Positions 30,455 to 52,244 of a stretch of DNA of 64,000 nucleotides are shown here, one piece after another. The notes beneath the pieces were generated by a model. The model did not search any database, was not told the origin of the DNA, and saw only the letters and a list, made by a program, of their open reading frames with translations. The stretch comes from Macrostomum lignano. Its lineage: Eukaryota. The position numbers and the translations under genes are program-made. Position 1 is the first letter of the stretch, and each line of letters starts with the position of its first letter. The DNA lies in NCBI GenBank assembly GCA_002269645.1, contig NIVC01002290.1, positions 1-64,000 of the forward strand. The letters run 5' to 3'.

Positions 30455-30901
30455 CTTTACTGACCAATCAGAGCAGCAGCAGGCCTTCATTCCAACCAAT
30501 CAGAGAGCAACAGGCCTTCATTCCAACCAATCTGAAAACAGTGAGACTCCAATTTCCCAACCAATTAGAGAGCAGCAGGCCACCATTCCAACCAATCAGA
30601 GAGCAGCAGGCCACCATTCCAACCAATCAGAGAGCAGCAGGCCTCCATTCCAACCAATCAGAAAGCAGTGGACTCCATTATAACCAATCAGAGAGCAGCT
30701 GGACTCCAATATTGCAACCAATCAGAGAGCAGCTGGACTCCAATATTGCAACCAATCAGAGAGCAGCTGGACTCCAATATTGCAACCAATCGGAGAGCAG
30801 CTGGACTCCAATATTGCAACCAATCGGAGAGCAGTGTGACTCCAATATTTCAACCAATCAGAGAACAGCGGGACTCCATTCCAACCAATCAGAGAGCAGC
30901 A
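30455..30901. repeat. CCAAT-containing minisatellite (31-35 bp, core AACCAATCAGAGAGCAGC) directly after the MXRA7-like stop
   Basis: About 14 CCAAT cores; the array abuts the TAG at 30904-30906. Confidence 0.93.
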
Positions 30902-30903
30902 GG

Positions 30904-32254: not shown

Positions 32255-35209
32255 TTAAGAGCCAAACAAATCTCGCATAGCCTCGCGCAGGTCAACGAAT
32301 CGAAACTGATAGCCGGTCTCCAGAGTGCGCCGGGGCGAAACGAACGCACCGTCAGTGAGAACGCCGGCCCGCTCTGCGCCGAACATCAACCGGACGACAG
32401 CGGCAGGCGTCGTCAGCAGAGCCGGACGTCGCAGACTGGCAGCCAGAGCGGCGGCCAGTTCAGCGTTGGTGTTGAGGGCCGGCGCCACGGCGTTAAGCAC
32501 GTCGGAATTGAATGACGGCGTCGGAGGCGGCAGGTCGGCCAGCAGGGCGTGCTCAAGGACGCCAACAGCGTCGCTGATGTGCACCCAGGCGACGGGCTGA
32601 CGTCCGCTGCCGGTCGGACCGCCGATGCCCAGACGGAACGGCCAGGCCATACTGGCCAGGGCGCCACCGTCGCGGCCGAGGGCGACGCCCATGCGGACGG
32701 CGATGCGGCGAGTGTCGCCGGTAGCGGCAGCTGCTGCTTCTGTTGATTTTGCGGCCCCCTCGAACACGGCGGCCTCGATGCTGGCGCAGAGCCGGCCGGC
32801 CAGGCTGGCGTCCGGCGCCCCTGCGTATGACTCGTCGAACACGGGCGGCGGGTCGGCGCGCATCTGGGCGGAGCGACGGGTTGATCGGGATTTAATGTAT
32901 GGGATTAGATCCTAGATATGGGAATATAATGACATGGAAAATTGGGACCAAAAATAGTAAATATTGGGGAAATTAATTAAGTTTTTGCAACTTAAATAAC
33001 ATAGAATTCGATAATTGGCGAGATTAGTTGATGGAAGATAGTAAAAGTTAGGATCTCAAGATAGGGATCTCAATTGATGGGGATCTGAATTGATGGGGAT
33101 CTGAATTGATGGGGATCTGAATTGATGGGGATCTGAATTGATGGGGATCTGAATTGATGGGGATCTGAATTGATGGGGATCTGAATTGATGGGGATCTGA
33201 ATTGATGGGGATCTTGATGGGATCTTAATTGATGAGGATCTGAATTGATGGGGATCTGAATTGATGGGGATCTGAATTGATGGGGATCTGAATTGATGGG
33301 GATCTGAATTGATGGGGATCTTGATGGGATCTGAATTGATGAGGATCTGAATTGATGGGGATCTGAATTGATGGGGATCTGAATTGATGGGGATCTGAAT
33401 TGATGGGGATCTGAATTGATGGGGATCTGAATTGATGGGGATCTGAATTGATGGGGATCTGAATTGATGGGGATCTGAATTGATGGGGATCTGAATTGAT
33501 GGGGATCTTGATGGGATCTGAATTGATGAGAGTCTGAATTGATGGGGATCTGAATTGATGGGGATCTTGATGGGATCTCAATTAAAAATTAAAAAGTATT
33601 CTTAGGATAGGGAACTCAAGATGGTGATCTCAAGATGGACTCTCTACTCACAGATGATGGGTAGTAGCCAACAGCTGACACGCCGACAAGGCGACTGGGC
33701 GGTTTCGGTCTGACAGCGGCGGCCGCGGCGGCCAGGCACCGAATCCGGCCGATGCGACTGTCGAACAGCTCGCTCACGTAGCGCCTGTAGGCCACCGTCG
33801 ACAGCCGCAGCGCCGGCCCCGCGTCCAGGATGCTCCGGCCGGACAGATTGCACACCAGCTCGACTCCGTCAGGCAGGCCGCAGCGCTCGACCTCCGGCCA
33901 AGTCAGCGCGTCCTGCTGGCGGGCGTCGCCGGCGCCGCGACTCCTGTCGACGGTGACTACCCGGTGGCCGGCGGAGCGGAGGCTGCGCACCAGGTAGCGC
34001 CCGATGAAGCCGCTGGCGCCGCCGACGGCTATGACAGATGGCCGGACGCTGGGAGACTGCGGGGGAGGAAGAACGAGAGCGTCAAAGTAGTGGCAGGTCA
34101 ACTGGGGTCACCCGGTGTGGAAAAAATAAACTTTGGAAAAAAATTGTAGAAATAGTCACGATCCAGGTCATCTAAGGTCACACTACTAGGGTCACCTAAG
34201 TTTACATTATTAGGGTCATTTTATTACACCTGCCCTAATGGGCAGGTGTGCAACCGACAGATCAGCCGCAGCTATTGCGTGGCGCATCTGAAGGCTGCGT
34301 ACGGCTGTTCAGTCCAAGGACTGGGGAGGGGGTCACCACACACACCCTCAATTACCCCAGCTAATCCTGGTACTAATTTTACAGCTGGGTCGTGAGTCCG
34401 ACGCTCTAATCACTTAGGCTACAATCCCTTAGGCCTTAGGGCCTTCTAAAACCACACTATTCAGTGTTATCGAAGGTCACACTGTCCAGGGTCATTTAAG
34501 GTCACACTATCCAGGGTCATCTAAGGTCAATTCTATTCAGGGTCATCTAAGGTCATTCTATTCAGGGTCATCTAAGGTCATTCTATTAAGGGTCATCTAA
34601 GGTCACACTATCCAGGGTCATCTAAGGTCATTCTATTCAGGGTCATCTAAGGTCATTCTATTCAGGGTCATCTAAGGTCGGTCATACTATTCAGGGTCAT
34701 CTTAAATCACACTATTTAGGGTCATCTAAGGTCAAACTATCCAGGGTCATCTAAGGTCAAACTATCCAGGGCCATCTAAGGTCAGCATGTTGAGCGATTT
34801 GATACCATTCTATTAAAAGTGAAAAATATCAAACATTCTATAGATAGGCAAAGTTATTCCCAAAAAGCAACACAAGAAGCTTATCCAATTCCTTTAGCCT
34901 TTGCTATAAAATATAACTTTGAATTTATTGTTTTAACCCGATCGAAAAAAACATAGCAGAAAAAATAGTTAAATATTTTAAGAGCCAAGAGGTGCAAAAG
35001 TGACCTTAAAATGCGGTTAAAGTGCATTAGGTACGAAAGGTAAACATTGCCTGTTTTAGGATGAATTTGACTAAAAAGCTGTTTATAATGGCATTGGCAA
35101 TGATAAAGTCAAATACCGGTATGTTAAAAGTATCAATATATAAACTTGCACACTTTTTCTGGATTTAACATCGCACCACTATCGAACACCTGTGTTTCTT
35201 TGCCTCCAT
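32255..35209 (-). CDS. SDR39U1: SDR39U1 / TIGR01777-type NAD(P)-dependent epimerase-family protein, 3 exons, ~341 aa
   Basis: Exons 35209-35190 (inferred), 34048-33652, 32863-32255, phase-consistent. Rossmann GGASGFIGRYL, CNLSGRSI, SAVGYY, RMGVALGRDGGAL, GIGGPTGSGRQPVAWVHISD, GYQFRF. Exon 1 is less certain. Confidence 0.88.
33070..33582. repeat. Intronic minisatellite, 16 bp unit CTGAATTGATGGGGAT
   Basis: SDR39U1 intron 2. Confidence 0.97.
34155..34790. repeat. Intronic minisatellite, ~25 bp unit CAGGGTCATCTAAGGTCATTCTATT, split by a SINE copy
   Basis: SDR39U1 intron 1; copies occur on both sides of the SINE fragment. Confidence 0.9.
34281..34428 (-). mobile_element. Internally deleted copy of the CORE-SINE
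   Basis: Matches 13586-13820 over GGCGCATCTGAAGGCTGCGTACGGCTGTTCAGTCCAAGGACTGGGG... but lacks the ~87 bp equivalent to 13698-13784 (B box and most of the CORE). Confidence 0.8.
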
Positions 35210-35381
35210 ATCAATGCTAACAAACAGTATTGACAGAAAAATAAGTAACTTGGTAAGCGTTTTGTGATTCTTAGTTAATAAGGCAGGCCACTTCAAATTG
35301 GCTTGAATTAGCTTACTTTCTTTGTTTACTATAGCAACGAGTGTATTAGATATTAAGACATGGAAACCAGAATAGTCGATA

Positions 35382-35554
35382 GTTGCCATGGCAACGAGTA
35401 GATTAGTTGGTTACAGACAGTTTTGAGTTACTATGGCAACAAAAACATACTAAAGAGTCACCATGGTAACAAAACATACTATATAGAGTTACCATGGCAA
35501 CGAATATCCTAGTCGCTACCATAGAGGAAAAAATTAACCGGTTGCCATGGCAAC
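35382..35554. promoter_or_regulatory. Cluster of five RFX X-box motifs
   Basis: GTTGCCATGGCAAC 35382-35395, GTTACTATGGCAAC 35427-35440, GTCACCATGGTAAC 35457-35470, GTTACCATGGCAAC 35488-35501, GTTGCCATGGCAAC 35541-35554. These match the GTNRCY-AT-RGYAAC consensus; function is inferred. Confidence 0.7.
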
Positions 35555-35590
35555 AGCCCGATTCCCATAGAATCACCAGCAGGCCGCAAG

Positions 35591-37507
35591 TCACTCCAGT
35601 TCGCCAACTAGAAAATCGCGAACCAAAGACAACGCCTTGGCCCGATGAGAAATTGTGTTCTTCACTTCCGGCACCATCTGGGCGAATGTCTCGTGAAATC
35701 CGTCCGGCTTGAATATCGGGTCCCAGCCGAATCGATTGTCGCCGGCCGGCTTGTCCGCTATGGAGCCCGGACACACTCCGGCGAAAACCTTCACCTCCTG
35801 GCCGGGCCCGCGACTGTAGGCGAACACGCAGCGAGCCTCGGCCGACTTGTCCGGGAATGCGGCCAACAGTTTGGGCAGGCCGTCCGGGCCCAGAGCGTCC
35901 AGGAACCACTTGATGTACACCCCGGTAGGCCGCCCAGGGCGTTGAAGCAGAGGCTGGTGTCCTCAACCAGCACAGGGCCGCCGACTCGCTCGGCCGCTAG
36001 GCGGCACTTTTCGCGGGCCACCTGCACACGGAATGAGGTTAGGCATGGGCTCGTTTAATGGGATTCTGATCGCCCCCTACAGAATCCATCTGGTTGCTAT
36101 ACAGAGTTTATCTGGTTGCTATGCCCAATACAGTGTCTTTATCTGGTTGCCATGCACCTTACAGTGTCTTTATCTGGTTGCTATGCCCAATACAGTGTCT
36201 ATCTGGTTGCTATGCCCAATACAGTGTCTATCTGGTTGCTATGCACCTTACAGTGTCTTTACCTGGTTGCTATGCCCAATAGTGTCTTTATCTGGTTGCC
36301 ATGCACCTTACAGTGTCTTTATCTGGTTGCTATGCCCAATACAGTGTCTATCTGGTTGCTATGCCCAATACAATGTCTATCTGGTTGCTATGCACCTTAC
36401 AGTGTCTTTACCTGGTTGCTATGCACCTTACAGTGTCTTTATCTGGCTGCTATGCACCTTACAGTGTCTTTATCTGGTTGCTATGCCCAATACAGTGTCT
36501 TTATCTGGTTGCTATGCACCTTACAGTGTCTATCTCGTTGCTATGCCCAATACAGTGTCTTTATCTGGTTGCTATGCCCAATACAGTGTCTTTATCTGGT
36601 TGCTATGCACCTTACAGTGTCTTTACCTGGTTGCTATGCCCAATACAGTGTCTTTATCTGGTTGCTATGCACCTTACAGTGTCTTTATCTGTTGCTATGC
36701 CCAATACAGTGTCTTTATCTGGTTGCTATGCACCTTACAGTGTCTTTATCTGGTTGCTATGCACCTTACAGTGTCTTTATCTGGTTGCCATGCACCTTAC
36801 AGTGTCTTTATCTGGTTGCTATGCCCAATACAGTGTCTATCTGGTTGCTATGCCCAATACAATGTCTATCTGGTTGCTATGCACCTTACAGTGTCTTTAC
36901 CTGGTTGCTATGCACCTTACAGTGTCTTTATCTGGTTGCTATGCACCTTACAGTGTCTTTATCTGGTTGCTATGCACCTTACAGTGTCTTTACCTGGTTG
37001 CTATGCCCAATACAGTGTCTTTATCTGGTTGCTATGCACCTTACAGTGTCTTTATCTGGTTGCTATGCCCAATACAGTGTCTTTATCTGGTTGCTATGCA
37101 CCTTACAGTGTCTTTATCTGGTTGCTATGCCCAATACAGTGTCTTTATCTGGTTGCTATGCACCTTACTGTGTGTTTATCTGGTTGCTATGCCCCCACAG
37201 TGTCTGTAGCTGGTTGCTATGCCCCCTACAGTGTTTGTATCTGGTTGCTACGCCCCTTACAGTACATTTTTCTGGTGGCTATGCACTATGCAGTGTTTTA
37301 TATGGTTGCCACCCAATTCCAGCTCTACATTTACAGCAGATTATGTCTCACCATCTCAGGCAAGCCTTGCAACTCTGGCAAATCAATATCCTTATTAACA
37401 ACTCTGTCTGACAATCCAGCAGTTAGTAGGATGCTATTTAACTCGCGCAGTTTGTTTGGATTGCCTGTAACAAAGGTGACTAGCTTGATCTTGCCAGATG
37501 TGGCCAT
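35591..37507 (-). CDS. ITPA: Inosine triphosphate pyrophosphatase (Ham1 family), 2 exons, ~195 aa after a 1-nt correction
   Basis: Exon 1 37507-37352 ([11 protein letters not shown]...DIDLPELQG). Exon 2 36021-35591 (VAREKC...[23 protein letters not shown]...[11 protein letters not shown]...[11 protein letters not shown]). One base is missing in the run at 35920-35923. Confidence 0.93.
36085..37310. repeat. Intronic minisatellite, 29-31 bp unit CTGGTTGCTATG(CACCT/CCCAA)TACAGTGTCTTTAT
   Basis: ITPA intron, about 40 copies. Confidence 0.97.
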
Positions 37508-38683
37508 TTATTTGAGAGTAGCAGAAAAGTTTAATAAATAGTTTGATGATAAATTTGATTAAGATTTCAAAATTGAAGTTTTATAAGTGTCTACAGTAGT
37601 TACTAACTGTCTAGTTAGACTATGTTATTAGTATTGATTGGCTGTACAATTTAATCTAAATTCATAATTAGTCAACTATTGACTACACATTAATAGAGTC
37701 GAGGTGTTGACTTGCCTTCCCCCAAAGTAAAGTATTGGGCCATGACCCTCTCTCCTAGAAAAAAACATTAGAATATTTGATATTTGATGGGACTTTCTAA
37801 TTCAGTTAAAGTTTTGAACTCGCTACACTGGTAGCCATTCTAAGCATTGGATAATAAGTATATTATAAATAGCATAAAACTTAAGAGTGGATTGATTTGC
37901 ATTGAGTAATCACTGGTTACATATTAGCCTCCATGTTGCCACATTAGCCTGATAGCAAACCTTATCCTGAATCAGCTTCATGTTTTTCAGAATGAAGCTG
38001 ACTGACATGGTGAGAGGTGAGTCAGTTAGAATATTATATAATTTGACTCTCAGCTTCTTGTCAGAAGTTCATCTTGATATTTGTAGATGATTCAGCTAAT
38101 ATAAAATTTTATCATTGATTCATGAAAGTGCATTGATCATGAAAATTTTCATGTTGAAATAAGTTAGCCAATAGGCTCTACACACTAGATAGTTGCAAAA
38201 AGTTGTGATATCTGTTTATAGGGCCTATATTATAAAATAAACAATTATAAAATTAAAGAAATGAATTAATTAGTAAACAAATAATGTTGAAATGTTAAAT
38301 GTTAAATATTAAAATGAATGTCTTGCTTTCCAGCCATGTCTTGCACAATGCATGTATATTTGCATAATTCATTGAAAATTATCTTTAAAATATATAATTA
38401 TTGGCTCAAATGCAAGAGCAAACCAATAAGGTATAAATAATAGTTGTATATTTAAAATTATTTCCCCATACATTAAAAAATTAGCACTAGCAAAAAGAAG
38501 CATTCTATAATTGATAATGCAATTAAAATAATTTTCAAAAATGCCAACTAAAAAAATGAACTTCGGTAGGATATTCAATAAACTCTATCTATTATATTAG
38601 CCAAAATCACTAATTGAATTGACTTTTGGTAAAAGGGTTTTGGTAAATCAACTTTTGGCAGAAAGTTTTTCAGCAAATCATCT

Positions 38684-39388
38684 AGGCCTAGTATTCAGCG
38701 AATACAATCCACTTTGGTAATAGCCATTTTGGTAACAGGCACTTAGGTAACAAAAAATGAACACTTTGGTAACTGCCACTTTGATAACAAAGCAGATTTA
38801 CATCTGTCAACACTTTATTTTTATGATAATTAGGTTTAGCAAAAAATTAGTTTAATAATTAACATCTCAAATATCTTATTGCACATATTGTTAAACTTTC
38901 TAGTTAAACTGTATTATACTTTGTTTAAACTTGCACAGTAAACTTTATGAAAAATTTAAAGGCAAAAAAAATTAAGCAAAGCAAGCTCCCATACATACAT
39001 TGAAATTGAAAAAATTAAATAATTAATGAAGAAAAAATAGATTCTGTAATTTTAAGTCACTATTTGCTAACTAGATCAGAGATTCCAATGTACACAGTAT
39101 ACAAAATTTGGTCAATTTTAGGATGTCTTAGGAGCATGAAATCTGACTCATCCAGAAATTAAAATAGATTGGTTAACTTAAAACACTTTAAAACAAGTTA
39201 AACACATGCAGGTACGCATAGGTGTTGTGCCATTCTTTCTTTAAATTTTGTTTGCACATCCTTTCAGAGCATATCAATTAATGCATATTATATTATTCTC
39301 ATTTGTTACCAAAGTGGCTGTTACCAAAGTGGCTGTTACCGAAGTCAAAGTGGACTATTACCGGATTCAGCAGAATTGCCTTAGGCCT
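38684..39388. mobile_element. Possible degenerate MITE with ~70-85 bp terminal inverted repeats
   Basis: 38684-38754 (aggcct...ccactttggtaatagccattttggtaacaggcacttaggtaacaaa) is an imperfect inverse of 39302-39388; the interior is AT-rich and non-coding. Confidence 0.45.
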
Positions 39389-40026
39389 AATTGCTAGTTA
39401 TAAGATTGTTGTCAAACATTTTCATTGACTTTAATATGCATACATAGGCTACACAATATACCTATATTTATAACATTCTTGCAAATATTTAGGCTTATAT
39501 TATTCTCAATAATAGTTGTGCTCAGTTACACTTGAACTAAAGATAAACCCAAAAATTCATATTATACTAAGCCCTATTAGGAGCATGAAATCTGACTCAT
39601 CCAGAAATTAAAATAGATTGGTTAACTTAAAACACTTTAAAACAAGTTAAACACATGCAGGTACGCATAGGTGTTGTGCCATTCTTTCTTTAAATTTTGT
39701 TTGCACATCCTTTCAGAGCATATCAATTAATGCATATTATATTATTCTCATTTGTTACCAAAGTGGCTGTTACCAAAGTGGCTGTTACCGAAGTCAAAGT
39801 GGACTATTACCGGATTCAGCAGAATTGCCTTAGGCCTAATTGCTAGTTATAAGATTGTTGTCAAACATTTTCATTGACTTTAATATGCATACATAGGCTA
39901 CACAATATACCTATATTTATAACATTCTTGCAAATATTTAGGCTTATATTATTCTCAATAATAGTTGTGCTCAGTTACACTTGAACTAAAGATAAACCCA
40001 AAAATTCATATTATACTAAGCCCTAT
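39128..40026. repeat. 449 bp tandem duplication (2 copies, identical by eye)
   Basis: ttaggagcatgaaatctg at 39128 and 39577; the copies match through aagccctat. Confidence 0.95.
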
Positions 40027-41715
40027 GGCTATGTACTATATAATATAGCCGTATAGGTAATAGGCCTAGGCGTAATAACTTAGTTAAATAAGTGCTTGGG
40101 CTCATAGATTCACAGACTAGGCCTACAGAGAAATAGCAACTCTTAGATTGAGTAATCTTCACCATATTTTCCACAGTCTACAAGCTATGTCTAGCACTAA
40201 ACTGACGAGTAAATTTATGGTTCATTAAAGCTGCAGGTTTAGAAGATAAAACAGAATTGTGTTGGAATTTAGGAGCCGCATGCTACGAAAAACTTTTTGT
40301 TTCTATGAAAATGTAAAATTTAATTGAACTCTTTATCTGGAGTTTTTACCTAATTACTATAACAGAATGTAGTAAATAACGTAAAATAGGATATAAAACA
40401 GCATTAAATGTCCAGTTTTAATGGTATAGGATGCACGATTAACAACTCGAACAACTCAACTTGAATTTCATAAAAATTCGTATACAGTGCCCCAAAAAAA
40501 TTATACATATTTATATATGCATTTATATACGTATACATACTGTACATTCATATAAAAATATATAGCTACTTGTATATGACACATCAACACATCCTTCAAC
40601 AAGAAGCAAGCTGCTATTGCACTCTCGCAATGCAACAAGACCAATAGCCTACATCACATGTATCATTCACGTCAAACGTAAATTTTAATTCTGCAAACAT
40701 GCAATGCAGTGCCCTAACGCATCATGCATTAATTATCTCGTCACATTCGAGGCTAGTATATGTGTAGCTGATAATTGCTGCAAAGTTTTTTATAACACAA
40801 AAATTGTGTTGAAATCCCCGCATTTCCGTCGAGCTGATGATATGAAAAAAGACATTGTCAGGAATTGATGCAGACTAAATTTTGTTTAACAGCACCTCAG
40901 AATGGCTCAGAACGTCTGAGATGAATCAAAAGACAACAATCAATGTCGAATAAGACTTAGAAATTTCCTTTGAAACCCTAGCTTGATCAAGCTACATGTA
41001 TTGGTATAAAGCTAGCTCGATCCCTTTCCCGCCGAAAAGCAAGTACATGTAGATCTACCCGTACAGCAGCCTATACAATTCAAGGCACCGGATTCACCAC
41101 CTCGGGCCAAAACATCCATTCGATAAAGCTTTGCCGACCGGAGAACATCCCACAGCACGTTCTCCTTGACCTCCCTGATCTTATTGTTGGATGGATTCCT
41201 TCGAGTTTCAATGGCTCGATCAACATGGCTTAACGTCCAATCGAACGTCTACGCTCGTACACATACATGTACATGTATACACGACTGATGCGACATATTT
41301 CGAATTTCTAATATGTCACTCTAGTGGTTATACCTGCCTTAACTTTTCAAAGATTAACGAATTAACGAATCATGGTTAAATAGATTCTCATTATATTTTG
41401 TAACTTGTCAATTATTATTAACATTAGTACCCCTGCACTTACTAGCTGGACTCTATTATAGAATCGATGAATCGAGTTGCCAGGGCTTTTAGCAGTTGGC
41501 AGAAGTCTATGGGAAAACTTGTCAGTATCGGTTGAATAAATAAAAAGCTGAATAAATTTATGAGCACGTAGGCCATAGACATATCTACGAGCCTGTATCC
41601 AAGAACTCAAAAGAGCTCGGGCTTTGTGCCTACTTTCATCTCATCGTTCACTGGCAAGTCCTGCTAGCTTTCCTCAAAGCTTACACAGCAGCAGCTAGAG
41701 AAGAAAAGCCCGAAA

Positions 41716-43086
41716 ATGCGCGAGTGCATCTCTATCCACATTGGCCAGGCTGGAGTGCAGATCGGCAACGCCTGCTGGGAGCTCTACTGTCTGGAGCACG
41801 GCATCCAGCCCGACGGCATGATGCTAGCCGGCAGGGAGAAATGCGACAGCTCAGTAGAGACGTTCTACTCCGAGACAAACTCTGGCCGTTATGTGCCGAG
41901 AGCTGTGTTCGTAGACCTGGAGCCCACCGTGATTGACGAAGTTCGCACTGGAACTTACAGGCAGCTGTTCCACTCGGAGCAGCTCATCACGGGCAAGGAG
42001 GACGCGGCTAATAACTACGCCAGAGGCCAGTACACCATTGGCAAGGAGGTCATCAACACCGTGCGAGAGGTAGTGTCCAGAGCGGTGGAGAACTGCAGCA
42101 GCCTGCAAGGCTTCTTTCTGTTCCACTCGTTCGGCGGCGGCACTGGCGCCGGCTTCACCTCCCTGCTGATGGACAAGCTGTCATCCGAGTATGGCAAAAA
42201 GGCCAAGGTGCAGACGTCCATCTACCCGGCGCCGCAGGTCAGCACCGCGGTTGTTGAGCCGTTCAATGCCATCTTGTGCACCCACGGCACATTGCGACAC
42301 GCCGATGTCACATTCATTGTGGACAACGAGGCCATCTACGACATCTGCAGGAGAAATCTAGACATTGAGAAGCCGACTTACACTAACCTGAATAGGCTGA
42401 TTAGTCAGATAATGTCTTCTATTACAGCTTCGTTGCGCTTTGAAGGCTCCCTCAACGTGGACATCACGGAGTTCCAGACCAACCTCGTGCCCTATCCCAA
42501 GATCCACTTCCCCCTAGCAACGTACGCTCCCATCATTTCGACCGAGAAAGCAAACCACGAGCAGCTCAAGGTCCGCGAGATCACCAACGCCTGTTTCGAG
42601 ACATCGAACCAAATGGTGAAGTGCGACCCTCGGCATGGAAAGTACATGGCCTGCTGTCTACTCTACCGCGGAGACGTCAACTCCAAGGAAGTCAGCGACG
42701 CTATTCAGAAGATCAAAGGCAAGCGCGAAATTCAATTTGTGGACTGGTGCCCAACCGGGTTCAAGGTCGGCATCAACTACCAGCCGCCCACCACGGTGCC
42801 TGGAGGCGATCTGGCGAAGGTGCCGCGAGCCGTCTGCATGCTGAGCAACACCACCGCCATCGCTGAGGCCTGGGACCGGCTAGCGTACAAGTTCGACCTC
42901 ATGTACTCCAAGCGGGCCTTCGTCCACTGGTACGTCGGCGAAGGCATGGAGGAGGGCGAGTTCGCTGAGGCGCGCGAGGACCTGGGCTCCATGCAGAAGG
43001 ACTACGAAGAAGTCGGAGTGGACAGTGTCGAAGGCGAGGAGGAAGAGGTCGAAGAGATGGACAAGGAAGGCGCTGATGGGGAATAA
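41716..43086 (+). CDS. TUBA: Divergent intronless alpha-tubulin, 456 aa
   Basis: MREC start, GGGTGAG signature, [41 protein letters not shown]; single uninterrupted ORF. Confidence 0.98.
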
Positions 43087-44484
43087 GCGAATCTTTAATT
43101 CTGGAATTATTTTTAAAGAGAGACTATATACTCCTTTTACAGCCGCATTGGAATTGGCCTTTTTTGGGGCTCGCAAACAGCTGCTTGAGGATGCATACTT
43201 TCTTTTTCCTTAAAAACATTTTCATCCCTTTCGGTCAGTATTTGAAAGCTTATATATTTTCGTTTTCGCAACGCAATTTGAAACAAATTTCCTTTTTCAA
43301 TCTCTGGCACACGTTCTTGCCTTTTTTAATTTTCAAAAGCTGCAGGCATGTTTGAACGTAAGAATCATTTGGTGACGAATACAAAAATTGCTTTTACGGA
43401 ACCAGTTAAAGATGAGTCTTAAACCGCCTTTTTTTCTATCATGGTCTTTTTATTTTAAATGCTAAATGCTCAAATTTCGCAGCAGAAAAGTGCAATTTAA
43501 AATCAAGCAAAGCAGAAACGTGCATGCCTCCATCAGCAACTGCACCTCTGAATCCAGTGTCAGATTTTTGCACGGCGACAATGGGATAGAACTATATACA
43601 TGCGTCTTTTCGCCCCCACCAGAGCATTGATGGTAGTACATGTACATCATGCAGGCCTCACATCTGAAGTCGGGCCTAGTGCCAGAAATTGCCTGAATAA
43701 TAGTGTCAACAGAGAGTGTGGTTTTCTGAAGCGCTGGTAGACCAAGTAGGCCGATTTATCCCTCCTCCGCCCCCGGCCCTAGCGGGTTATTCGCACGCAA
43801 TCGAATGTACTGTGACGAATATCTGGTCCGCGAGTTCGCGTGCTGACGGGCTGCTAATCAAGTACTGATTGACCACACAGTTAGTGGTGACCGATAACTG
43901 ACGAAGCCGATTATTCGATTACGGATTATGTATATTTGTAGGTTACAGACACGAACGGTACATGTAGTGGTAAATAGCTGATGCTAAACAGGTCATTGGT
44001 AACGAACAGCTGTAGTGTCGATGGAATGGCTTCGAAGATGACCTTTAGTGGGAAACACTACTTAATTGAGAGCGATTTTGAACTACTGTTTATTAGGAAA
44101 TTAAATTGCTGGCGATAGAAACAGCAGCCGAACTCCACGCGCAGTCCTCTCCGAAGCCACAGAATTCAAAATGTTGAATATAACTATTTTAATTCAGTAA
44201 AACAAATCATTGTTTAATATTGTCGATGAACATAAAAATGAAACCAATTAATATAAATAAAATACATATTAAATATTTTAGTAGATTTATTAATCGACGA
44301 ATTGGAATAATAAAAGAACTGCCAACGTCACAGTATAAACTTTCTTCTTGTAGCTCCCTCAATCGCTTCGAATCGGATCGTTGACTGGCTGTCTGTCTGT
44401 ACTATCGGATCAGCCTATGTAGCTATCTCCCGCGTGATCTTAGTGGTCTAAAATTTTAGCTGCCATTCTAATAATATATACTTT

Positions 44485-47400
44485 TGTAAAAATTGAATAA
44501 GGCAGACTAGAGGGCCGTCAATTGAACTAGCAAATAAGAAATAAGAATTAGAGCGTTCACAGAGACGCCTGCCATAACTTATATATTGATTCAAAGTCTC
44601 TCTGACGCAACCACAACCCTCACCATGCACACTGAGGAGGGGGAACGCCAAGCGTACACCTGACGGCGCTACACAGAACAGAGGGTGTAGGCTAGACAGG
44701 AACACAACTAACCATGATCGACACTCCCCCTAATGATGCTTCATCATTAAAGTACTTGAAAACGTTGATTTTCCAATCAACAGCCTTCACTCGCTGCCTG
44801 ACATGGATCAGCCAAAACTTCTCACGCAGTTTGTAAAGGGTGCTTGGAACTTCCCCGTGCAGAACTTTGCTGTGCGCGTCCCTGGATGAGGAGAACTTCT
44901 AGATGCGTCTTGTTCGAGATAAGGATGGGAATATAAGGATGGGCCGATAAGCAGCTGCACCAACGCTTGATTTATTTTTTCAATCGACCCCGACTTCGGA
45001 GCAGACCTTTGCTGTCGATGAAGAGATTCAGCTGCTTTGCGAGATCCGTAGATGCTGTCGACCTTTCAAACTGAGCAATCTCAGCGGGAAACTCCTTCAT
45101 TAATAGTAACTCTTCCAGCCAACGCTCCTCTGCTTCTGACACTTCTGCAGCTGTCAGAGTTCCTGCTCGCTCCTCCCCGCTGCGGAAGTTCGAACTTGCA
45201 AGTTTCTCACGAATCGAAAGACGTAAGCCGTCACCCTAATGAGCTTGGTCCAGGAGGAGATATCCGAATCTGTTATAACTCGCCGCAGCCCCAGGTCCGG
45301 AACAACATCAGGAAGCAGGACGATTGATTTGTCTTGGTCTGTTGTGTTAGCTCGAACTGCCGGCAAAATCGCTTTACTGTTTGACTGCCAATGGCGTAGA
45401 TTCATTCCTGCCTGGCTGAAGACGTGACGGGATCTTTGGATGAGTTCCATGGCTTGTCGTTCGCTTGCGCATCCAGAGATTAGATTGTCCGCATAGATCT
45501 CTTCATGAGAGGCGATTCAGCCCGACTTAGATCCCTGTGGCCAGAGAAAACGCAGTGCATCCCGATCTTCAGCAATGCGAATCTGAAGAAACACCTTTTC
45601 AATATCAGTTGTAAGAGCGATCGGATGAAACCGGAATGCTTGAAGAAGACGAGGAATCTGGGCCAACGAGCACGATCCAGTCTCCAGGCACTCATTCAAG
45701 GACGAGCTCCACCGATCTCGCTTAGCACTGGCATCTTGCCACTCTGACTTTCGTCGACTCTGCTTCAGGACGAATCACTGCTCGGTGAGGCAAGTAGTGG
45801 TCAAGATGGTGCGTGCCGACGGAAACCTCCTCCACTATTCCAGCTTCTTTCTGGCTCATCAGAATGCGGTGGTACTCCTGCAGCAGTGCGGGTTCACGGC
45901 GCAGTCTTCTCAGGTTGCTCTGAAGCCTCGAATTAAGTGTCCAATTCGAAAGGCCTTTTGCTCAGGTTCGGATGCGCTGGTAATGCCAATGCCTTCAAGC
46001 GTCCAAAATGTCTCCATGGAACAGTTTTCAAGGCCTTTGTTAGTGTTGTGTATTGCAAAGGCATGCGATGCGTAGGGGTAGTTCGGGGACAGCGTTTCTA
46101 GAAACTTCCACCGCGGACTTGTTTACGCATAGTTCCAGAAGTTTCCTTCCCCGGTCTTTCTAGAACTTTCCTTCCCCGCGTGCATAAATATACGAGCCGC
46201 CCTCCTATTGGCAAACCCCCTTCTTTTGGTGCCACTGAGCGCCCGGAAAATTATCTATCTTGTTTCTGCGTTCGTTAATTCAACAACAGAACATTGGCGA
46301 CGAGGATGGCGGCTAGCATCCCCGCACCCACGCCCTTCCTGGCGAACTGCGGATCACCGACAGTACCATGGAGCCGATGGATTGAGGCCTTTGAATTTTA
46401 TTACGAGGCGGCCCAATTCAAGGAGCCCGAAGGGAAGGAAGAGGCGAAACCGCTGAAGAAGAGCCTTCTGCTCCATCTGCTTGGATTCGAAGGTCAGCGG
46501 GTTGCTCGAGCACGCCAAGCAATCAAGGAGAACGACACGTTCGCAGCAACTAAGGCGGAGCTCGAGAAGATCTTCGGCGAGAAGCCCAACGTGATGGTGG
46601 CCAGATATCGCTTCCGCCAGCGCCAGCAGCTACCCGGCGAGGACGTCAAGACCTTCGTGGCAGCCCTGAGGGAGCTGACGGAGCTGTGCAACTACGGCGC
46701 GATACAGGACGATCTCATCAGAGACTAGCTGGCTGAGAAGACCAGTAACCCCAGAATCCGAGAGAGGCTGCTGACGGAGAAGGTGGAGGACCTCAACCTG
46801 GCGAAAGCACTCAGCATCGCGGTCTCCATCGAGGAAGCCTCCAAAGAAGCCAAGGCGATGGCGCCATCAACCTCGAGCACAGCTGCCGTCCAATCGATCC
46901 GACAGCCGAGGGGCCAGAAAGTCGCTGCAAAAGGGAGGCACCGCCCAGCACCAGCTGGCAGGACGGCCAAACCTGGCGGCGCCTGCACGCACTGTGGGCG
47001 AGACCACGGACCGACGACCCCCTGTCCGGCCAAGGGCAAGACATGCGACGCCTGTGGCAAGAAGAACCACTTCCGGAGTTGCTGTCGCAGCCAGCAGGCT
47101 GCTGTCAATGCCGCGGACGAGGTGATCACAGTCTACGCAGTGCCAGGTGGCGACAGGGAGGTCCGGGCGACGCTGGAACTCGGACCGGACAGGACTGCTG
47201 TCAGCCTGATGGTGGACTGCGGCGCAAGGGTGTCGCTGCTGTCCCGACAGACCGCCGACCGGATCTCAGGTGCAGTCACCTCTCCCACTACGACGAAGCT
47301 GCGTGCCTACGGTGGACTGCCGATCCAGCTAAGTGGTGTCACCGAGCTAGAGGTGCGCTACGGCGACAAGGCGATGCAGCACCGGTTCTTCGTTGCGCCA

Positions 47401-50400
47401 GGCGGCGACAACATCGTCGGTAGAGACCTGATGGAGAAGCTGGGCTTCCGAGTCGACCTTAGCGGGCAGCCACCCGGAATCGCGAAGGTCAGCGACTTGA
47501 CGGCGGACTTGCAGGCGCGGTACCCAACGACCTTCAGCGGTGCGATAGGATGCTGCGCCGGCGCTGTGCACCAGCCCAAGGTCGACCCAGCAGTGCGACC
47601 CGTCCAGCAGCCACTCTGTCGCCTGCCCCTCATGCGACAGGAGCAGGTCGGTGCCGAACTCGACAAGATAGAGAAGGACGGCATCATCGAGCGAGTTCTC
47701 GGACTTCTTGGCCGAGCAGGGCATCCGGCACGTCAAGACCAGCCTCTACCATCCGCAGACCAATGGCCAGACGGAGCGTCTCAATCGGTCGCTGTTCGCC
47801 AGCATCAGAGCGGCCATGGTGGAGAACAGGCCGTTTCAAGACGCCGTGACCAACTTCTTGTCTGCCTACCGGAGCTCCAAGCACAGCCTGACGGGCAAGT
47901 CACCGGCCGAGCTCATGCTGGGTCGGAAGTGGCGCACCGCGATCACCATGCTGTCTCCCGGAGGGGGAATGACAACGACCGAGGCGACGCCTCAGGCACT
48001 GCGGCAGCAAATCGAGGCGCGGCAGCAGCGGATCAAGGCCTACACCGATGCCAGGCGAAGGGCCCGCCCCGAGACGTTCCACCCCGGCGAGTGGGTGAGA
48101 ATCCGACGGCCCACCAAGAAGGGCAAGCTGGGTACCCGCCTCTCACGGCCACTACAAGTGCTCCATCAGGCGGGACACCACGCGGTCGAGCTCAGCGACG
48201 GCACCAGATGGAACCGGCAGCGGCTGATCCGAACACCGCACCCGGCGCAGCCGAGAGAGCGGTTCGACCCACTGGTGGACTCGGCGCCAACGACCGGAGC
48301 CGGCACGGCGGCACCGGCGGTACCGGCGGCGGAGCCTCCGGCAAGAACAGCAGCGCCCCGCCGATCTGAGCGAGCCAGGCACCCGCCGATACGCTTCATG
48401 AACTGCCGCTGGGACTGATTAAAGTGAAGTTTGGGGACTGTTGGACTCCTTGAAGGAGGGGAAGAATGTTGTGTATTGCAAAGGCATGCGAGGCGTAGGG
48501 GTAGTTCGGGGACAGCGTTTCTAGAAACTTCCACCGCGGACTTGTTTACGCATAGTTCCAGAAGTTTCCTTCCCCGGTCTTTCTAGAACTTTCCTTCCCC
48601 GCGTGCATAAATATACGAGCCGCCCTCCTATTGGCAAACCCCCTTCTTTTGGTGCCACTGAGCGCCCGGATAATTATCTATCTTGTTTCTGCGTTCGTTA
48701 ATTCAACAACAGAACAGTTAGCTCCGTGTGCGCAGCAGAGAAGCACTTGCCCTTTCTTGCCTTCCAGTTCTCCTGCCGAAATGGCGTCGGACAAGGAGCC
48801 ACACAGGAGCCACCCAAGCTGACTGGCTACTGCAACAGCCCCGTTCTGATTTCAGAACGATCCACCTGTCCTGTGACAGGGTCATAAAACTGGTCAGCTC
48901 ATACGAGGATGTTGATCTCTGGATGCTGCTCGCTGCCGATGTCCCAGTCTGCCAGATCCAGATGTAGGAAGTGATCGCTGCGCAAGCTGTTGACAACGGG
49001 CTGATGAGAGCAGATGTAGAGTACTGTGTTGGCGCACAATGTGAAGGGAGTAACGCCGTCGAGCTTACGAAGTTGGAACTCGACCTTCTCCATTTGTAGG
49101 AACCTTGGGCTCTGTGCCTCCAAATGTCGTCACTTCCATTGTCTCTTTGCCGATCATACAGAGTCCCATACGCTCAGCTAAGCCTGACAGGATGAACGAA
49201 CGGTTGCTCGCAGAGTCGAAAAGAATTCGAACCCGTGTTTCACTGCATCCTTCTGGTTAAATCAGCACAGCTCCCGCAGTAAGAGGAATCACTGTCTGGG
49301 CCTTGGTTACCATTTTCATTAGTCTTTACTTCGTGGCTCTCGTCACTGCGCGTCCGACTGTTCGAGTTTCTTCCTTCCTGAACCCGCCGTATCGAAGGTG
49401 CAACTAGGCATCCTGTCTGCCGGTCTCGGTTGGCTGTTCCACTAGCGCAGCGCAGAGACTGGGATGATGCTTTAACTTGCAGAAGTCACACTGCTTCTTC
49501 TGATAACAAGTTTTTTTGGTGGCATGACCTTTAGAGAGGCAACTGAAGCCTAGTGGGCACAGTCGATTGCAACTCTCCGGGGCAATGTTCAGCGTCACAG
49601 TAAGGACACATACTGCTGGCTCTAGCGACCTTCGTAGCCTTCGTCTGCAAAGCAGATACCGTCGTACCTTTCTTGGTTTGCCTGTCAACCGCGTGGGAGT
49701 CTGTGATGAACTGGCTGCTTGAACTCCTGCTCTGAGAGCCGCTTCCTCCCTAACCAGGATTTCTACGAGCTAAGTCCAGGACATTGAAGAATTCTTTAAT
49801 CGAATCTAATCCGTTCTCATCCGTCACTTATAGCTGACTGCCACCATAAAAAGGCCGTACGCGGCAACCATCATGGCAGTTCTAAGCATCCCGAGGCGGA
49901 CCACTTCCGGCAACTTGGGCAGCAACATAGTCTCGTATGAAGCAACACTCACCCCGAGATTCTCCAGGCTGCGGACATTGCCGTTGACTTGATCGTAGAA
50001 GTTTCTGAGGTGGTGGACTGAAGCACCTGAACAGGTCAGAGCCGAAAATTTTGCCAGATGATCGCGCGCGGCTACTCTCCGGTATCCAACCGTCGTTGCA
50101 GGTTATCGATCGCGATCTTACGTAGTTCTCGGCTGTGATGTTAAGGCCGGCGATCGAATTCTTGGCTTCTTCTGAAAGGCGCGATTGCAGGTAGCTAAAC
50201 CTGTCAACGATACTGAGGCTCGGGTTATCGTGGATGCTGTTAACTGAAGCGGTCCCAGAATGCACCATTGCATCCGATATCCATTGAATGCTAGCGGCGG
50301 CAGCTTGGGTAGCCTAATGGCCGGAGTAGTCATCAATTCAGCATTCTCTCGTGGTGACGTGGATGGAGTTGATTCTTTCGATTGCTGCTGCTCTTTTGCC

Positions 50401-51029
50401 TGCATGCGGCTTTCCCGCACAGCCTGAAGACTGCAGTCGCTTGGCAAGACTCGAAATCATCTTTCCAGCCAGCAGCTCGATCGTACTCCATGGTCTTCTC
50501 CACATCCTCTTTTGGAGCTTCTCGTCGATCTCAACGGACAGCTCTTCATCCGCTGCCAGCAGCTGTTGTTTTTTGAGGCGCAGGGCTTCCAGTACGCTGT
50601 CGATATCTTCCTCAGCAGCCCGGCCCTGAGTTGAGGAGGTCTTGGGCTTTTTGGGCCAATCTGCAGTGACCGTCACTATCAAAACTCCACGTATTTTGGA
50701 GCTGTCCATGCTGAACTGATGAGAAACCGCTGAGTCACTGTAGCACTATAAAGACAATAATTTCAATAATGTGAAATTCACTAATGAGTTCGGGCGCCAT
50801 TTTGTAGAAAATGAATAAGGCTGAGGGCCGTCAATTGAACTAGTACATTTAAATAAGATATAAGAATTAGGCGTTCACTGAGACGCCTGCCATAACTTAT
50901 ATATTTGATTCAAAGTCTCTCTGACACAACCACAACCCCACCATGTACACTGAGGAGGGGGAACGCCAAGCGTACACTTGACGGAGCTACACAAAACAGG
51001 TGTAAGCAGGCACACAACTAACCATGACA
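44485..51029 (-). mobile_element. Degenerate BEL/Pao LTR retrotransposon interrupted by a Gypsy element
   Basis: LTRs at 50803-51029 and 44485-44723 (TG..CA on minus, visibly diverged). PBS TGGCGCCCGAAC 50799-50788; PPT beside 44724. Fragments: gag (IRLPKLPP...SIVDRFSYLQSRL), Zn knuckle (CDFCKLKHHPSLC), protease (RILFDSASNRSF), RT (TTDIEKVFLQI...DALRFLW; YADN). Many stops and deletions; no TSD found. Confidence 0.9.
46044..48716 (+). mobile_element. Young non-autonomous Ty3/Gypsy LTR element with an RT-RNaseH-integrase deletion
   Basis: 250-bp LTRs at 46044-46293 and 48467-48716 (2 substitutions seen by eye), TSD GTTAG, PBS TGGCGACGAGG 46295-46305, PPT GAAGGAGGGGAAGAA. Gag ATG 46306 with an in-frame TAG at 46726, CCHC knuckle, protease (MVDCGA), start of RT, then integrase C-half (YHPQTNGQTER). 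Confidence 0.95.
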
Positions 51030-52244
51030 TATTCACGTAGTTTGCGGCATAACTAGGCTTTCTATCAGAAGTAAAAAATACAATTTTGTAATAATTTAAT
51101 GCCCTATTTCACTCAAAGCAGCTTTTTTGCAAGAAAACTTAAGAAATTTAATTAACTTGTTATAATGCACATCTATGTAAAAGCATTACTAGAAACAAGA
51201 GAATTTAAACACTTTTTTATCGAGTTTAAAAAAATCGGTTTAAAATAGCATAGTTTAATATTTATTTTTTCTTCAAAAGCATAGGCGTTTTAAAAAATGG
51301 TGGGATTTGACGGGATAAGCCTCAGCCAAGCAGTGAAGATTAAAGTATGCATTATATAGCAAAAATATTTGATTTTCTTAACAGAAGTAGGAGCATCGCC
51401 CCAGGCCAGACCAGATGGACCACATCAAAAAGTGGCGGTTCCATTGCCATATTGACCCATATAACGTTAGCGTTAACGAGTGCATCAATGGCTGAAAGCA
51501 AGAATCCACGAAGTTTTGATATGTAAAAGTATCTATTGAAGTTAGTTACTATTACTAACTATCTAGTAACTGGCAACTGACAAGCTATATCATGCTCGTT
51601 TTTTTACTAATTAAAATAAATCCTAATGTATAAATCAACATTAAATTGCAGTTTAATACTTTTTAAAATTATTTTAAACCGTTTAAGATTCAGTCTTTAG
51701 GATCTGATTTGATTTTAGAATCAGTAAAATGACATACTTTATTAGTTTTAATTTTTGCAGAGCTTTTATAATCATATGATACTTAAATGGTTTGATTTAA
51801 ATGTTAAAATTGAGTATTGATTGCTATTGTAAAACCTAGGCTCAATAGACAACAATTTTATTTTAGCTCTTAAATGGCAAAGGTCTATAATATTCGAAGA
51901 AAGTTTTTTCCAAAAGTATCTTCTTACTGCTAATTTGCAAACAAAAATCATTAAAATGATTACCTAATAATGGTCAATTCTTTACTAACTAATTATTGAA
52001 TTTTAAATTATAATATAAATATTCTGAGCTTAATAAGTTAGTCTAAAATCATAAAATTTTATCATAATAAGGCTAACAATTAATAAATTAGATTCATTTA
52101 AAGTAAAAAATTGGTAAATATTCATTCTATTTTTATATTTACAGACAGATTTACTACCTAGCTTCAATTTGCCACAGTTTTTTAAAGTAAACTTAGTTTA
52201 CATCAAAACTTACAATTTTTGCATGTTTCCAACTATACCCTAGC

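What the first reader, a model, noticed from the sequence alone, without database searches (positions are those of the whole stretch)
35324..35554. Five RFX X-boxes packed into 173 bp upstream of SDR39U1, partly built by tandem duplication
Two perfect GTTGCCATGGCAAC palindromes and three near-perfect boxes lie 170-345 bp before the SDR39U1 ATG, with weaker half-sites near 35324 and 35360. Boxes 2-4 are spaced 30-31 bp within similar flanks (gag-box-aaaacatacta), which points to amplification by the same tandem process that fills the introns. RFX/X-box control of ciliary genes is established, but a ciliary role for SDR39U1 is not known to me. Inference: minisatellite birth has created a homotypic enhancer, possibly an internal promoter of an operon that recruits a metabolic enzyme to ciliated cells.
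Basis: partly seen in the sequence, partly recalled or inferred. Interest (0 to 1): 0.7.

Follow-up and report, generated by a model that had tools for sequence, protein, structure and literature searches.

The report
Tandem RFX-type X-box array behind ITPA
Five near-perfect binding sites for the cilia regulator RFX are packed into 173 bases of a flatworm genome, but they begin 36 bases after the end of one gene (ITPA), lie 1.3-1.5 kb ahead of the next (SDR39U1), and show no sign of being kept by selection, so a role in ciliated cells is unproven.

Summary
The five X-box palindromes are real. They start at 35382, 35427, 35457, 35488 and 35541, and two are perfect GTTGCCATGGCAAC. All fit the strict RFX consensus GTNRCCNNRGYAAC. 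Nothing else in the 64 kb does (8 strand hits against 0.10 expected).

The window is Macrostomum lignano contig NIVC01002290.1.
- All the genes involved are on the minus strand.
- The array starts 36 nt after the ITPA stop codon.
- It lies 1.33-1.50 kb upstream of the first coding exon of SDR39U1.
- That exon has no ATG. It starts at a consensus acceptor and most likely gets an in-frame AUG from the spliced leader.

The stretch 35324-35554 is a degenerate array of eight units of about 30 bp. Only the box is conserved between units. Unit number differs among the three genomic copies. In the 95.8%-identical paralogue only two boxes still fit the consensus, and the boxes changed at the neutral rate.

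Verdict: a real, tandemly amplified array of RFX-type sites in the spacer between ITPA and SDR39U1. RFX binding is plausible. Nothing found here supports a ciliary role for SDR39U1.

The parts
35541..35554 (.). Box A (unit 1): perfect palindrome GTTGCCATGGCAAC, 36 nt after the ITPA stop codon.
   Evidence: Identical in all three genomic copies.
35512..35524 (-). Unit 2: decayed box (minus strand CTATGGTAGCGAC). Its flank TAGGAT.TT matches the extra unit found in paralogue L001.
35488..35501 (.). Box B (unit 3): GTTACCATGGCAAC. Fits the consensus on both strands.
   Evidence: L001 has a 2-nt insertion in the spacer here (GTTGCCATATGGTAAC).
35457..35470 (.). Box C (unit 4): GTCACCATGGTAAC. Fits the consensus on the plus strand.
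   Evidence: L001 reads GTTACCATGGTAAC on the gene strand.
35427..35440 (.). Box D (unit 5): GTTACTATGGCAAC. Fits the consensus on the minus strand.
   Evidence: The first G is lost in L001 (TTTGCCATAGTAAC).
35382..35395 (.). Box E (unit 6): perfect palindrome GTTGCCATGGCAAC.
   Evidence: L001 reads GTTTCCATGGCAAC.
35359..35367 (-). Unit 7: half-decayed box (minus strand GTTTCCATG).
35324..35338 (-). Unit 8: decayed 15-nt box (minus strand GTTGCTATAGTAAAC). It overlaps a forkhead-type GTAAACAA.
35425..35501 (.). The youngest part of the array, which TRF calls a tandem repeat: 31-bp unit, 2.5 copies, 83% matches.
   Evidence: Copy number differs in L001.
35591..36021 (-). Last exon of ITPA (Ham1p_like). 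Stop codon TGA at 35593-35591. This copy has a 1-nt deletion (G4 instead of G5) near 35925.
36107..37309 (.). 31-bp minisatellite in the ITPA intron (39 copies). It carries 36 copies of GTTGCYATG, an extended RFX half-site.
   Evidence: Not detectably homologous to the X-box unit.
37352..37507 (-). ITPA exon 1. ATG at 37507-37505; donor atg|gtgaga.
35208..35210 (-). It is not a start codon.
   Evidence: No usable in-frame donor. Reads ATA in L001.
34456..34784 (.). 25-bp minisatellite (13 copies) inside the ITPA-SDR39U1 spacer. It inflates the intergenic distance.
   Evidence: Part of it is absent in L001.
33652..34056 (-). First coding exon of SDR39U1. It starts right after the acceptor ...ttcctcccccgcag (AG at 34058-34057) and has no ATG. 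The frame tct ccc agc continues the AUG at the end of the spliced leader.
   Evidence: The annotated partial CDS starts 0, 6 or 9 nt after the acceptor in the three copies. The SL sequence is from PMC8629364.
32255..32863 (-). Second and last coding exon of SDR39U1 (DUF1731/epimerase), stop codon included.

Best explanation
The stretch 35324-35554 is a degenerate tandem array of eight units of about 30 bp. The conserved core of each unit is a consensus RFX X-box palindrome.

It sits in the spacer between two same-strand genes of Macrostomum lignano. It starts 36 nt after the ITPA stop codon, so it is probably transcribed as ITPA 3'UTR or intercistronic RNA. It ends 1.33 kb ahead of the acceptor where SDR39U1 most likely receives the spliced leader.

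Shown:
- the motif matches and their excess over chance;
- the repeat structure;
- the gene positions;
- that unit number and box sequences differ among the three genomic copies.

Inferred:
- The array grew by slippage or unequal exchange from one X-box-bearing unit.
- As DNA it can bind RFX dimers with high affinity wherever the chromatin is open (my estimate about 0.6).
- It is a young element under little or no constraint. At most it is a lineage-specific RFX-responsive enhancer or internal promoter for the downstream trans-spliced genes. It is not the proximal promoter of SDR39U1.
For: - Motif: all five boxes fit GTNRCCNNRGYAAC, giving 8 strand hits against 0.10 expected, with none elsewhere in the window.
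- Repeat structure: TRF finds a 31-bp array. Aligning the eight units shows conservation only in the box columns. Boxes A and E match 14/14 while their flanks match 10-11 of 32.
- Turnover: L001 has an extra unit. Four box-changing events fall in 70 bp, against 57 substitutions in 1365 aligned non-box positions (4.2%). Only two boxes in L001 fit the consensus, against five in the window and L002.
- Gene context: organism and genes, ITPA stop and SDR39U1 acceptor.
- Trans-splicing and operons: the SL ends in ATG, and the published operon rule uses repeat-adjusted distances (PMC8629364).
- RFX in flatworms: in a planarian an Rfx orthologue is tied to cilia gene modules whose promoters are enriched for the RFX motif (PMC12660999). 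A schistosome protein has an RFX DNA-binding domain 80% identical to human RFX1.
Against: - No binding, chromatin or expression data were available.
- Two perfect palindromes with unrelated flanks are hard to get from neutral decay of one duplicated unit. That points to some force keeping or recreating the box, so selection may be stronger than I assume.
- The paralogue comparison has little power: four events observed against about three expected under neutrality. Three of the four lie on the L001 side, so the window copy could still be constrained.
- I did not show that M. lignano has an RFX gene.
Confidence: 0.45

Rival explanations
1. The array is a selected homotypic RFX enhancer or internal promoter within an ITPA-SDR39U1(-MXRA7-like) operon. 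It drives SDR39U1 in ciliated cells.
For: - The sites are of the highest quality.
- Between units only the box is conserved.
- The array is on the same strand and upstream of a gene that appears to be SL trans-spliced.
- A Drosophila screen searched a strict X-box consensus (RTNRCC N1-3 RGYAAC) up to 3 kb upstream, and found palindromic boxes over-represented in true targets (PMC2375033).
- A forkhead-type GTAAACAA lies next to unit 8.
- The planarian Rfx-cilia link (PMC12660999).
Against: - The boxes are 1.33-1.50 kb from the first coding exon. All validated C. elegans X-boxes lie within 500 bp upstream (PMC3245922).
- In Drosophila the mere presence of an X-box did not predict regulation; conservation did. 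Here four of the five shared boxes changed in the paralogue, at the neutral rate.
- No SDR39U1-cilia or SDR39U1-RFX link in the literature or in the held target lists.
- The SDR39U1 family is widespread in bacteria, so its distribution does not track cilia.
Confidence: 0.2
2. A neutral minisatellite that resembles an X-box by chance. It is not bound by RFX in vivo and has no function.
For: - The region is saturated with minisatellites: 31 TRF rows in 12 kb.
- Other arrays nearby also carry transcription-factor-like cores. GTTGCYATG occurs 36 times in the ITPA intron, and AACCAATCAG 9 times right behind the MXRA7-like stop codon. A recognisable motif in some array is therefore expected by a look-elsewhere effect.
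- The boxes changed at the neutral rate and unit number varies between paralogues.
Against: - My estimate for a random 31-bp unit matching the 19-bit consensus is about 1e-4.
- The two perfect palindromes (35382, 35541) lie outside the young tandem part and have unrelated flanks.
- Conservation among the eight units is confined to the box.
- No other match occurs in the window or outside the array in the paralogous locus.
Confidence: 0.25
3. The element works at RNA level. The mutually complementary boxes fold the ITPA 3'UTR or intercistronic RNA into a long nested hairpin that affects 3'-end processing, stability or separation of the cistrons.
For: - The minus-strand RNA 35595-35310 folds to -82.1 kcal/mol, with z = -3.3 against shuffles. 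Three nested helices form: box A with box E, unit 2 with box D, and box B with box C.
- The first canonical AATAAA is 662 nt after the ITPA stop codon, so the array is probably transcribed.
Against: - Such a fold follows automatically from repeated palindromes.
- The changes in L001 are not compensatory. G to T in box E and the 2-nt insertion in box B break pairs, and the extra unit changes the nesting.
- No Rfam family matches.
Confidence: 0.05
4. RFX acts on ITPA rather than on SDR39U1. The array would be a 3' enhancer or repressor of a gene that cleans the nucleotide pool, or a protein roadblock that helps terminate ITPA transcription before SDR39U1.
For: - The array starts 36 nt after the ITPA stop codon. 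The first 100 nt after the stop, including box A, are identical in all three copies although the spacer averages 4.2% divergence.
- Yeast RFX (Crt1) represses the ribonucleotide reductase genes through several strong and weak X-boxes. Human RFX1 represses MAP1A through two X-boxes in an exon (PMC3245922).
Against: - The adjacent ITPA exon differs at only 1 of 467 positions between paralogues. The invariant block may therefore reflect gene conversion or recent homogenisation, not selection on box A.
- I know of no animal precedent for an RFX roadblock terminator.
- No X-box lies upstream of ITPA.
Confidence: 0.05

Closest known systems
X-box promoter motifs of RFX/DAF-19 target genes in C. elegans, Drosophila and vertebrates
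   Same: A 14-bp imperfect palindrome that fits GTNRCC N0-3 RGYAAC. The perfect form GTTGCCATGGCAAC is, to my knowledge, the optimal RFX1-3 site. Palindromic boxes are over-represented in true Drosophila targets (PMC2375033).
   Different: Known targets usually have one box, within about 500 bp of the ATG in C. elegans (PMC3245922), conserved between species, and next to a ciliary gene. Here there are five consensus boxes plus three remnants. They lie 1.33-1.50 kb from the next coding exon and directly behind another gene's stop codon. They are next to genes with no known ciliary role and are not conserved in a paralogue.
Genes regulated through several X-boxes: yeast RNR2/3/4 via Crt1, human MAP1A, C. 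elegans F25B4.2
   Same: More than one X-box of differing strength acts on one gene. The effects can be synergistic or antagonistic (PMC3245922).
   Different: Those cases have two or three non-repeated boxes in a promoter or first exon, and they have been tested functionally. Here the boxes are units of a tandem array in an intercistronic spacer and are untested.
SL trans-spliced operons of Macrostomum lignano, with repeat-inflated spacers (Ustyantsev and Berezikov 2021, PMC8629364)
   Same: Same-strand neighbours. The downstream gene starts at a YNCAG-type acceptor. The spacer is inflated by tandem repeats. The SL ends in AUG.
   Different: The modal repeat-adjusted spacer is about 100 bp with a 1-kb cut-off. 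Here the distance from stop codon to acceptor is 1533 nt, or 1035 nt after removing TRF repeats, which is borderline. As far as I know, internal promoters have not been described for this species.
Regulatory minisatellites and homotypic site clusters, such as arrays of one factor's sites acting as enhancers or pause elements (from my own knowledge)
   Same: Tandem amplification multiplies one binding motif, and copy number varies.
   Different: No activity has been shown here.

Membership tests
RFX X-box cis-element | The sequence fits the consensus GTNRCC N0-3 RGYAAC. | tested here: met
   Five boxes and 8 strand hits against 0.10 expected; two are perfect palindromes.
RFX X-box cis-element | Bound by an RFX protein of the same organism. 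| not testable with these tools
   No ChIP or DAP data were available. RFX is shown for other flatworms only (hit P0088). The search listed only short fragments, none from M. lignano.
RFX X-box cis-element | Lies close to the start of the regulated gene: within 500 bp in C. elegans, and up to 3 kb searched for a strict consensus (RTNRCC N1-3 RGYAAC) in Drosophila. | tested here: inconclusive
The boxes are 1326-1498 bp from the first SDR39U1 coding exon and 36 nt after the ITPA stop codon. The transcription start site is unknown.
RFX X-box cis-element | The box is conserved in homologous loci, the feature that predicted true targets in Drosophila. | tested here: not met
   In the 95.8%-identical paralogue only box A is unchanged. 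Four events fall in 70 box positions, matching the spacer rate of 4.2%. Two boxes fit the consensus there, against five here. No other species could be compared.
RFX X-box cis-element | The neighbouring gene is ciliary or RFX-dependent. | tested here: inconclusive
   No link found for SDR39U1 or ITPA in full-text searches or in the held supplementary target lists. Absence from these sources is not proof.
M. lignano SL operon | Adjacent genes lie on the same strand with no opposite-strand gene between them. | tested here: met
   ITPA, SDR39U1 and the MXRA7-like gene are all on the minus strand in three loci.
M. lignano SL operon | The downstream gene is SL trans-spliced. | tested here: inconclusive
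   The evidence is indirect. The exon starts after ...cccccgcag and has no ATG. The NCBI models are 5'-partial and begin 0, 6 or 9 nt after the acceptor. The AUG at the end of the SL is in frame. No SL-containing reads were seen.
M. lignano SL operon | Repeat-adjusted intergenic distance below 1 kb (PMC8629364). | tested here: inconclusive
   Stop codon to acceptor is 1533 nt. Removing 498 nt of TRF repeats leaves 1035 nt. The distance should be measured from the unknown poly(A) site, which would shorten it.
Minisatellite / tandem repeat | Head-to-tail copies whose number varies between copies of the locus. | tested here: met
   TRF finds 2.5 copies of 31 bp. An eight-unit degenerate array is visible. 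L001 has one extra unit.

The most novel reading that the evidence does not exclude
Tandem amplification of a single X-box has created a homotypic RFX enhancer or internal promoter inside a spliced-leader operon. It puts SDR39U1, and perhaps the MXRA7-like gene behind it, under ciliated-cell control in one set of genomic copies. The paralogue with mostly broken boxes (L001) serves as a natural loss-of-function control.
Probability: 0.15. Interest if true: 0.6.

Novelty: new member of a known kind. Interest (0 to 1): 0.3.

Why it matters
If the array is active, it would be a clear, datable case of regulatory sequence born from a minisatellite. It would also be a first example of an internal, factor-specific promoter in a flatworm operon. 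M. lignano has transgenesis and RNAi, and a paralogue with decayed boxes is available as a natural control, so the idea can be tested.

If it is inactive, it is a caution. In a genome this full of minisatellites, perfect transcription-factor motifs can be amplified without meaning. The same window also holds a CCAAT-box array and an X-box half-site array.

Tried and rejected
- Exact look-up of the 109-aa ORF of the last ITPA exon found nothing.
- I tested whether the X-box unit and the 31-bp ITPA intron minisatellite share an origin, since both have a 31-bp period and contain GTTGCYATG. Their similarity is not above chance: P = 0.73 ungapped and 0.30 with local alignment.
- Rfam and tRNA scans of 33900-36100 gave only a sub-threshold bacterial leader match, which I take as chance.
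- The sigma-70 promoter and terminator scan does not apply to a eukaryote. It only re-found the palindrome.
- The poly(A)-signal scan was uninformative. None of four genes in the window has AATAAA or ATTAAA within 400 nt of its stop codon.
- Literature searches for SDR39U1 with cilia, RFX or FOXJ1, and for the three Mlig gene identifiers, found nothing relevant.
- Held supplementary files of a human RFX target study and a Xenopus Rfx2 target study contain neither SDR39U1 nor ITPA.
- An RFX DNA-binding-domain search meant to show an M. lignano RFX returned only short fragments. A schistosome hit was found, but no M. lignano hit among the 120 listed.
- No other Macrostomum species turned up in the protein search, so no cross-species comparison of the spacer was possible.
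- I considered NFI as an alternative binding factor, because TGGCA half-sites are present. I rejected it because the half-sites are everted and abutting, not TGGCA-N3-TGCCA (my own knowledge).

Full report
**What is in the sequence.** Five 14-mers lie between 35382 and 35554: GTTGCCATGGCAAC (35382), GTTACTATGGCAAC (35427), GTCACCATGGTAAC (35457), GTTACCATGGCAAC (35488) and GTTGCCATGGCAAC (35541). Each fits the classical strict X-box consensus GTNRCCNNRGYAAC on at least one strand. That gives 8 strand hits in the window against 0.10 expected from dinucleotide shuffles, and no hit anywhere else in the 64 kb. Boxes 2-4 are 30 and 31 bp apart, and TRF calls them a 31-bp repeat of 2.5 copies.

**Organism and genes.** A protein search with the SDR39U1 exons returned Macrostomum lignano proteins at 97-99% identity. 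The window is the exact reverse complement of part of contig NIVC01002290.1 of assembly GCA_002269645.1.

All the genes involved are on the minus strand. In order:
- ITPA (Ham1p_like): exon 1 at 37507-37352, an intron filled by a 31-bp minisatellite, last exon at 36021-35591 with stop codon TGA at 35593-35591.
- The X-box array.
- A 25-bp minisatellite.
- SDR39U1: exons at 34056-33652 and 32863-32255.
- An MXRA7-like gene.
- A bestrophin gene.

The first box in gene orientation (35554-35541) starts 36 nt after the ITPA stop codon.

**The SDR39U1 start.**
- The obvious donor there (CAG|GTGTTC) joins out of frame to the SDR39U1 exon.
- The only in-frame GT sites (ATA|GTGGTG and GTG|GTGCGA) do not fit the species' donor motif GT[G/A]AG.
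- In the paralogous locus the ATG reads ATA.

The real first coding exon follows a polypyrimidine tract and ...cccccgcag (AG at 34058-34057). It contains no ATG. All three NCBI gene models are 5'-partial and begin 0, 6 or 9 nt after this acceptor. The 35-nt spliced leader of M. lignano ends in ATG (PMC8629364). Joined to tct ccc agc ..., it gives M-S-P-S-V-R-P-S-V-I-A-V-G-G-A-S-G-F-I-G in frame. I therefore infer that SDR39U1 is SL trans-spliced and takes its start codon from the leader. This is inferred, not shown, because I saw no SL-containing reads.

The boxes are thus 1326-1498 bp upstream of the first coding exon, not 170-345 bp.

**Operon question.** The published rule for this species calls two same-strand genes an operon if the downstream one is trans-spliced and the repeat-adjusted spacer is under 1 kb. 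That paper also notes that repeats inflate operon spacers (PMC8629364). Here the stop codon is 1533 nt from the acceptor. Removing 498 nt of TRF repeats leaves 1035 nt, before subtracting the unknown ITPA 3'UTR. The pair is therefore a borderline but plausible operon. No canonical poly(A) signal occurs until 662 nt after the ITPA stop codon, and the same holds for neighbouring genes, so this says little. Any 3'UTR longer than 36 nt includes box A.

**Anatomy of the array.** Read on the gene strand, 35554-35324 splits into eight units of 23-45 nt. Each begins with a box or a box remnant:
- u1: perfect box.
- u2: decayed (CTATGGTAGCGAC).
- u3-u5: near-perfect.
- u6: perfect.
- u7: half-decayed (GTTTCCATG).
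- u8: decayed (GTTGCTATAGTAAAC).

In an alignment of the units, conservation is confined to the box columns. Boxes A and E match 14/14 while their flanks match 10-11 of 32. Only u3-u5 share clearly similar flanks.

**Comparison of the three genomic copies.**
- L002 (Mlig015606) is 99.6% identical across the spacer and has identical boxes.
- L001 (Mlig029812) is 95.8% identical, with 59 substitutions in 1434 aligned positions.
- L001 has one extra unit (GTTACCATGGTAGC).
- Four of the five shared boxes differ in L001: a 2-nt insertion in the spacer of box B, GTGAC/GTAAC in box C, loss of the first G in box D, and G to T in box E. Box A is unchanged.
- That is four events in 70 box positions, against 4.2% substitutions in the rest of the spacer. 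This is the neutral expectation.
- Only two boxes in L001 still fit the strict consensus, against five in the window and L002.

The first 100 nt after the ITPA stop codon, including box A, are identical in all copies. The adjoining ITPA exon differs at only 1 of 467 positions, so this block may reflect homogenisation rather than selection on box A. The test has low power. Three of the four changes are on the L001 side, so constraint in the window lineage cannot be excluded.

**What it most likely is.** The sequence is a real, tandemly amplified array of high-affinity RFX-type sites. In a planarian, an Rfx orthologue is connected to cilia gene modules whose promoters are enriched for the RFX motif (PMC12660999). 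A schistosome protein carries an RFX DNA-binding domain 80% identical to human RFX1. RFX binding in M. lignano is therefore a reasonable inference, although I did not show the factor in this species.

Whether the array regulates anything is open.
- For function: site quality, conservation confined to the box, and a position upstream of a trans-spliced gene.
- Against function: the distance to that gene, neutral-rate change in the paralogue, and no link of SDR39U1 or ITPA to cilia or RFX in full-text searches or in the held target lists.
- The SDR39U1 family is also common in bacteria, so its distribution does not follow cilia.
- The Drosophila screen showed that the presence of an X-box alone does not predict regulation, while conservation does (PMC2375033).

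**Look-elsewhere caution.** The neighbourhood is packed with minisatellites: 31 TRF rows in 12 kb. Two other arrays also carry factor-like cores. The ITPA intron array has 36 copies of GTTGCYATG, and an array right behind the MXRA7-like stop codon has 9 copies of AACCAATCAG. The intron unit is not detectably related to the X-box unit. Amplified motifs may simply be common in this genome.

**Other readings.**
- As RNA, the array would fold into three nested box-box helices (z = -3.3). This follows automatically from repeated palindromes, and the L001 changes are not compensatory.
- RFX might act on ITPA as a 3' element or roadblock. This is conceivable given multi-X-box repression of the yeast RNR genes and human MAP1A (PMC3245922), but nothing here supports it.

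**Comparison with known systems and novelty.** X-boxes, and genes with two or three X-boxes, are known (PMC3245922). M. lignano operons with repeat-inflated spacers are also known (PMC8629364). What is unusual is five consensus copies made by tandem amplification in an intercistronic spacer. Without evidence of activity I file it as a new member of a known kind. My interest score is 0.3.

The most novel reading that the evidence still allows is a minisatellite-born RFX internal promoter in an operon, with L001 as a natural control. I put it at about 0.15.

Noticed in passing
window 35924-35927 (minus-strand ITPA last exon): This copy of ITPA has a run of four G where both other genomic copies have five. 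The result is a frameshift. NCBI models this copy as 128 aa, against 195 aa for the others. It could be a homopolymer error in a long-read assembly or a truly broken redundant copy.
   Followed up: partly
window 36107-37309 (ITPA intron); L001 and L002 equivalents: A 31-bp minisatellite fills the ITPA intron. It carries 36 copies of GTTGCYATG, an extended RFX half-site. There are about 15 copies in L002 and about 8 in L001, so copy number varies between genomic copies. The unit is not detectably homologous to the X-box unit (P = 0.3-0.7).
   Followed up: partly
window 30463-30903: A minisatellite (TRF period 34, 13.6 copies) starts right after the stop codon of the MXRA7-like gene. It carries AACCAATCAG, an NF-Y-type CCAAT box, 9 times. 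This is a second case in the window of a factor-like motif amplified behind a stop codon.
   Followed up: no
window 34056-34058: SDR39U1 has no start codon of its own. The exon begins right after a cag acceptor, in frame with the AUG that ends the M. lignano spliced leader. This is why all three NCBI models are '5'-partial'.
   Followed up: yes
L001 1-21560 (opposite strand): The annotation of the paralogous contig has a 258-aa Tubulin_C gene model on the opposite strand that spans the whole 21.5-kb locus. It is probably a chimeric or read-through model. The other two copies have no equivalent.
   Followed up: no
window 41716-43086 (+), 38000-41000: An intronless, somewhat divergent alpha-tubulin (456 aa) lies head-to-head with ITPA across a 4.2-kb spacer of 27-33% GC. 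That spacer includes a perfect 449-bp tandem duplication (39128-40026).
   Followed up: no
window 52197-52941 (+); 44400-51000; 60000-63500: Exons of a NEK-type protein kinase lie at 52197-52941. Nested and degenerate retroelement ORFs (gag, integrase, reverse transcriptase, endonuclease) lie at 44.4-51 kb and 60-63.5 kb. No X-box lies near any of them.
   Followed up: no
window 35322-35329: A forkhead-type core (GTAAACAA on the minus strand) overlaps the decayed unit 8 of the array and is kept in the paralogue. One such match in 300 bp is not significant by itself.
   Followed up: no
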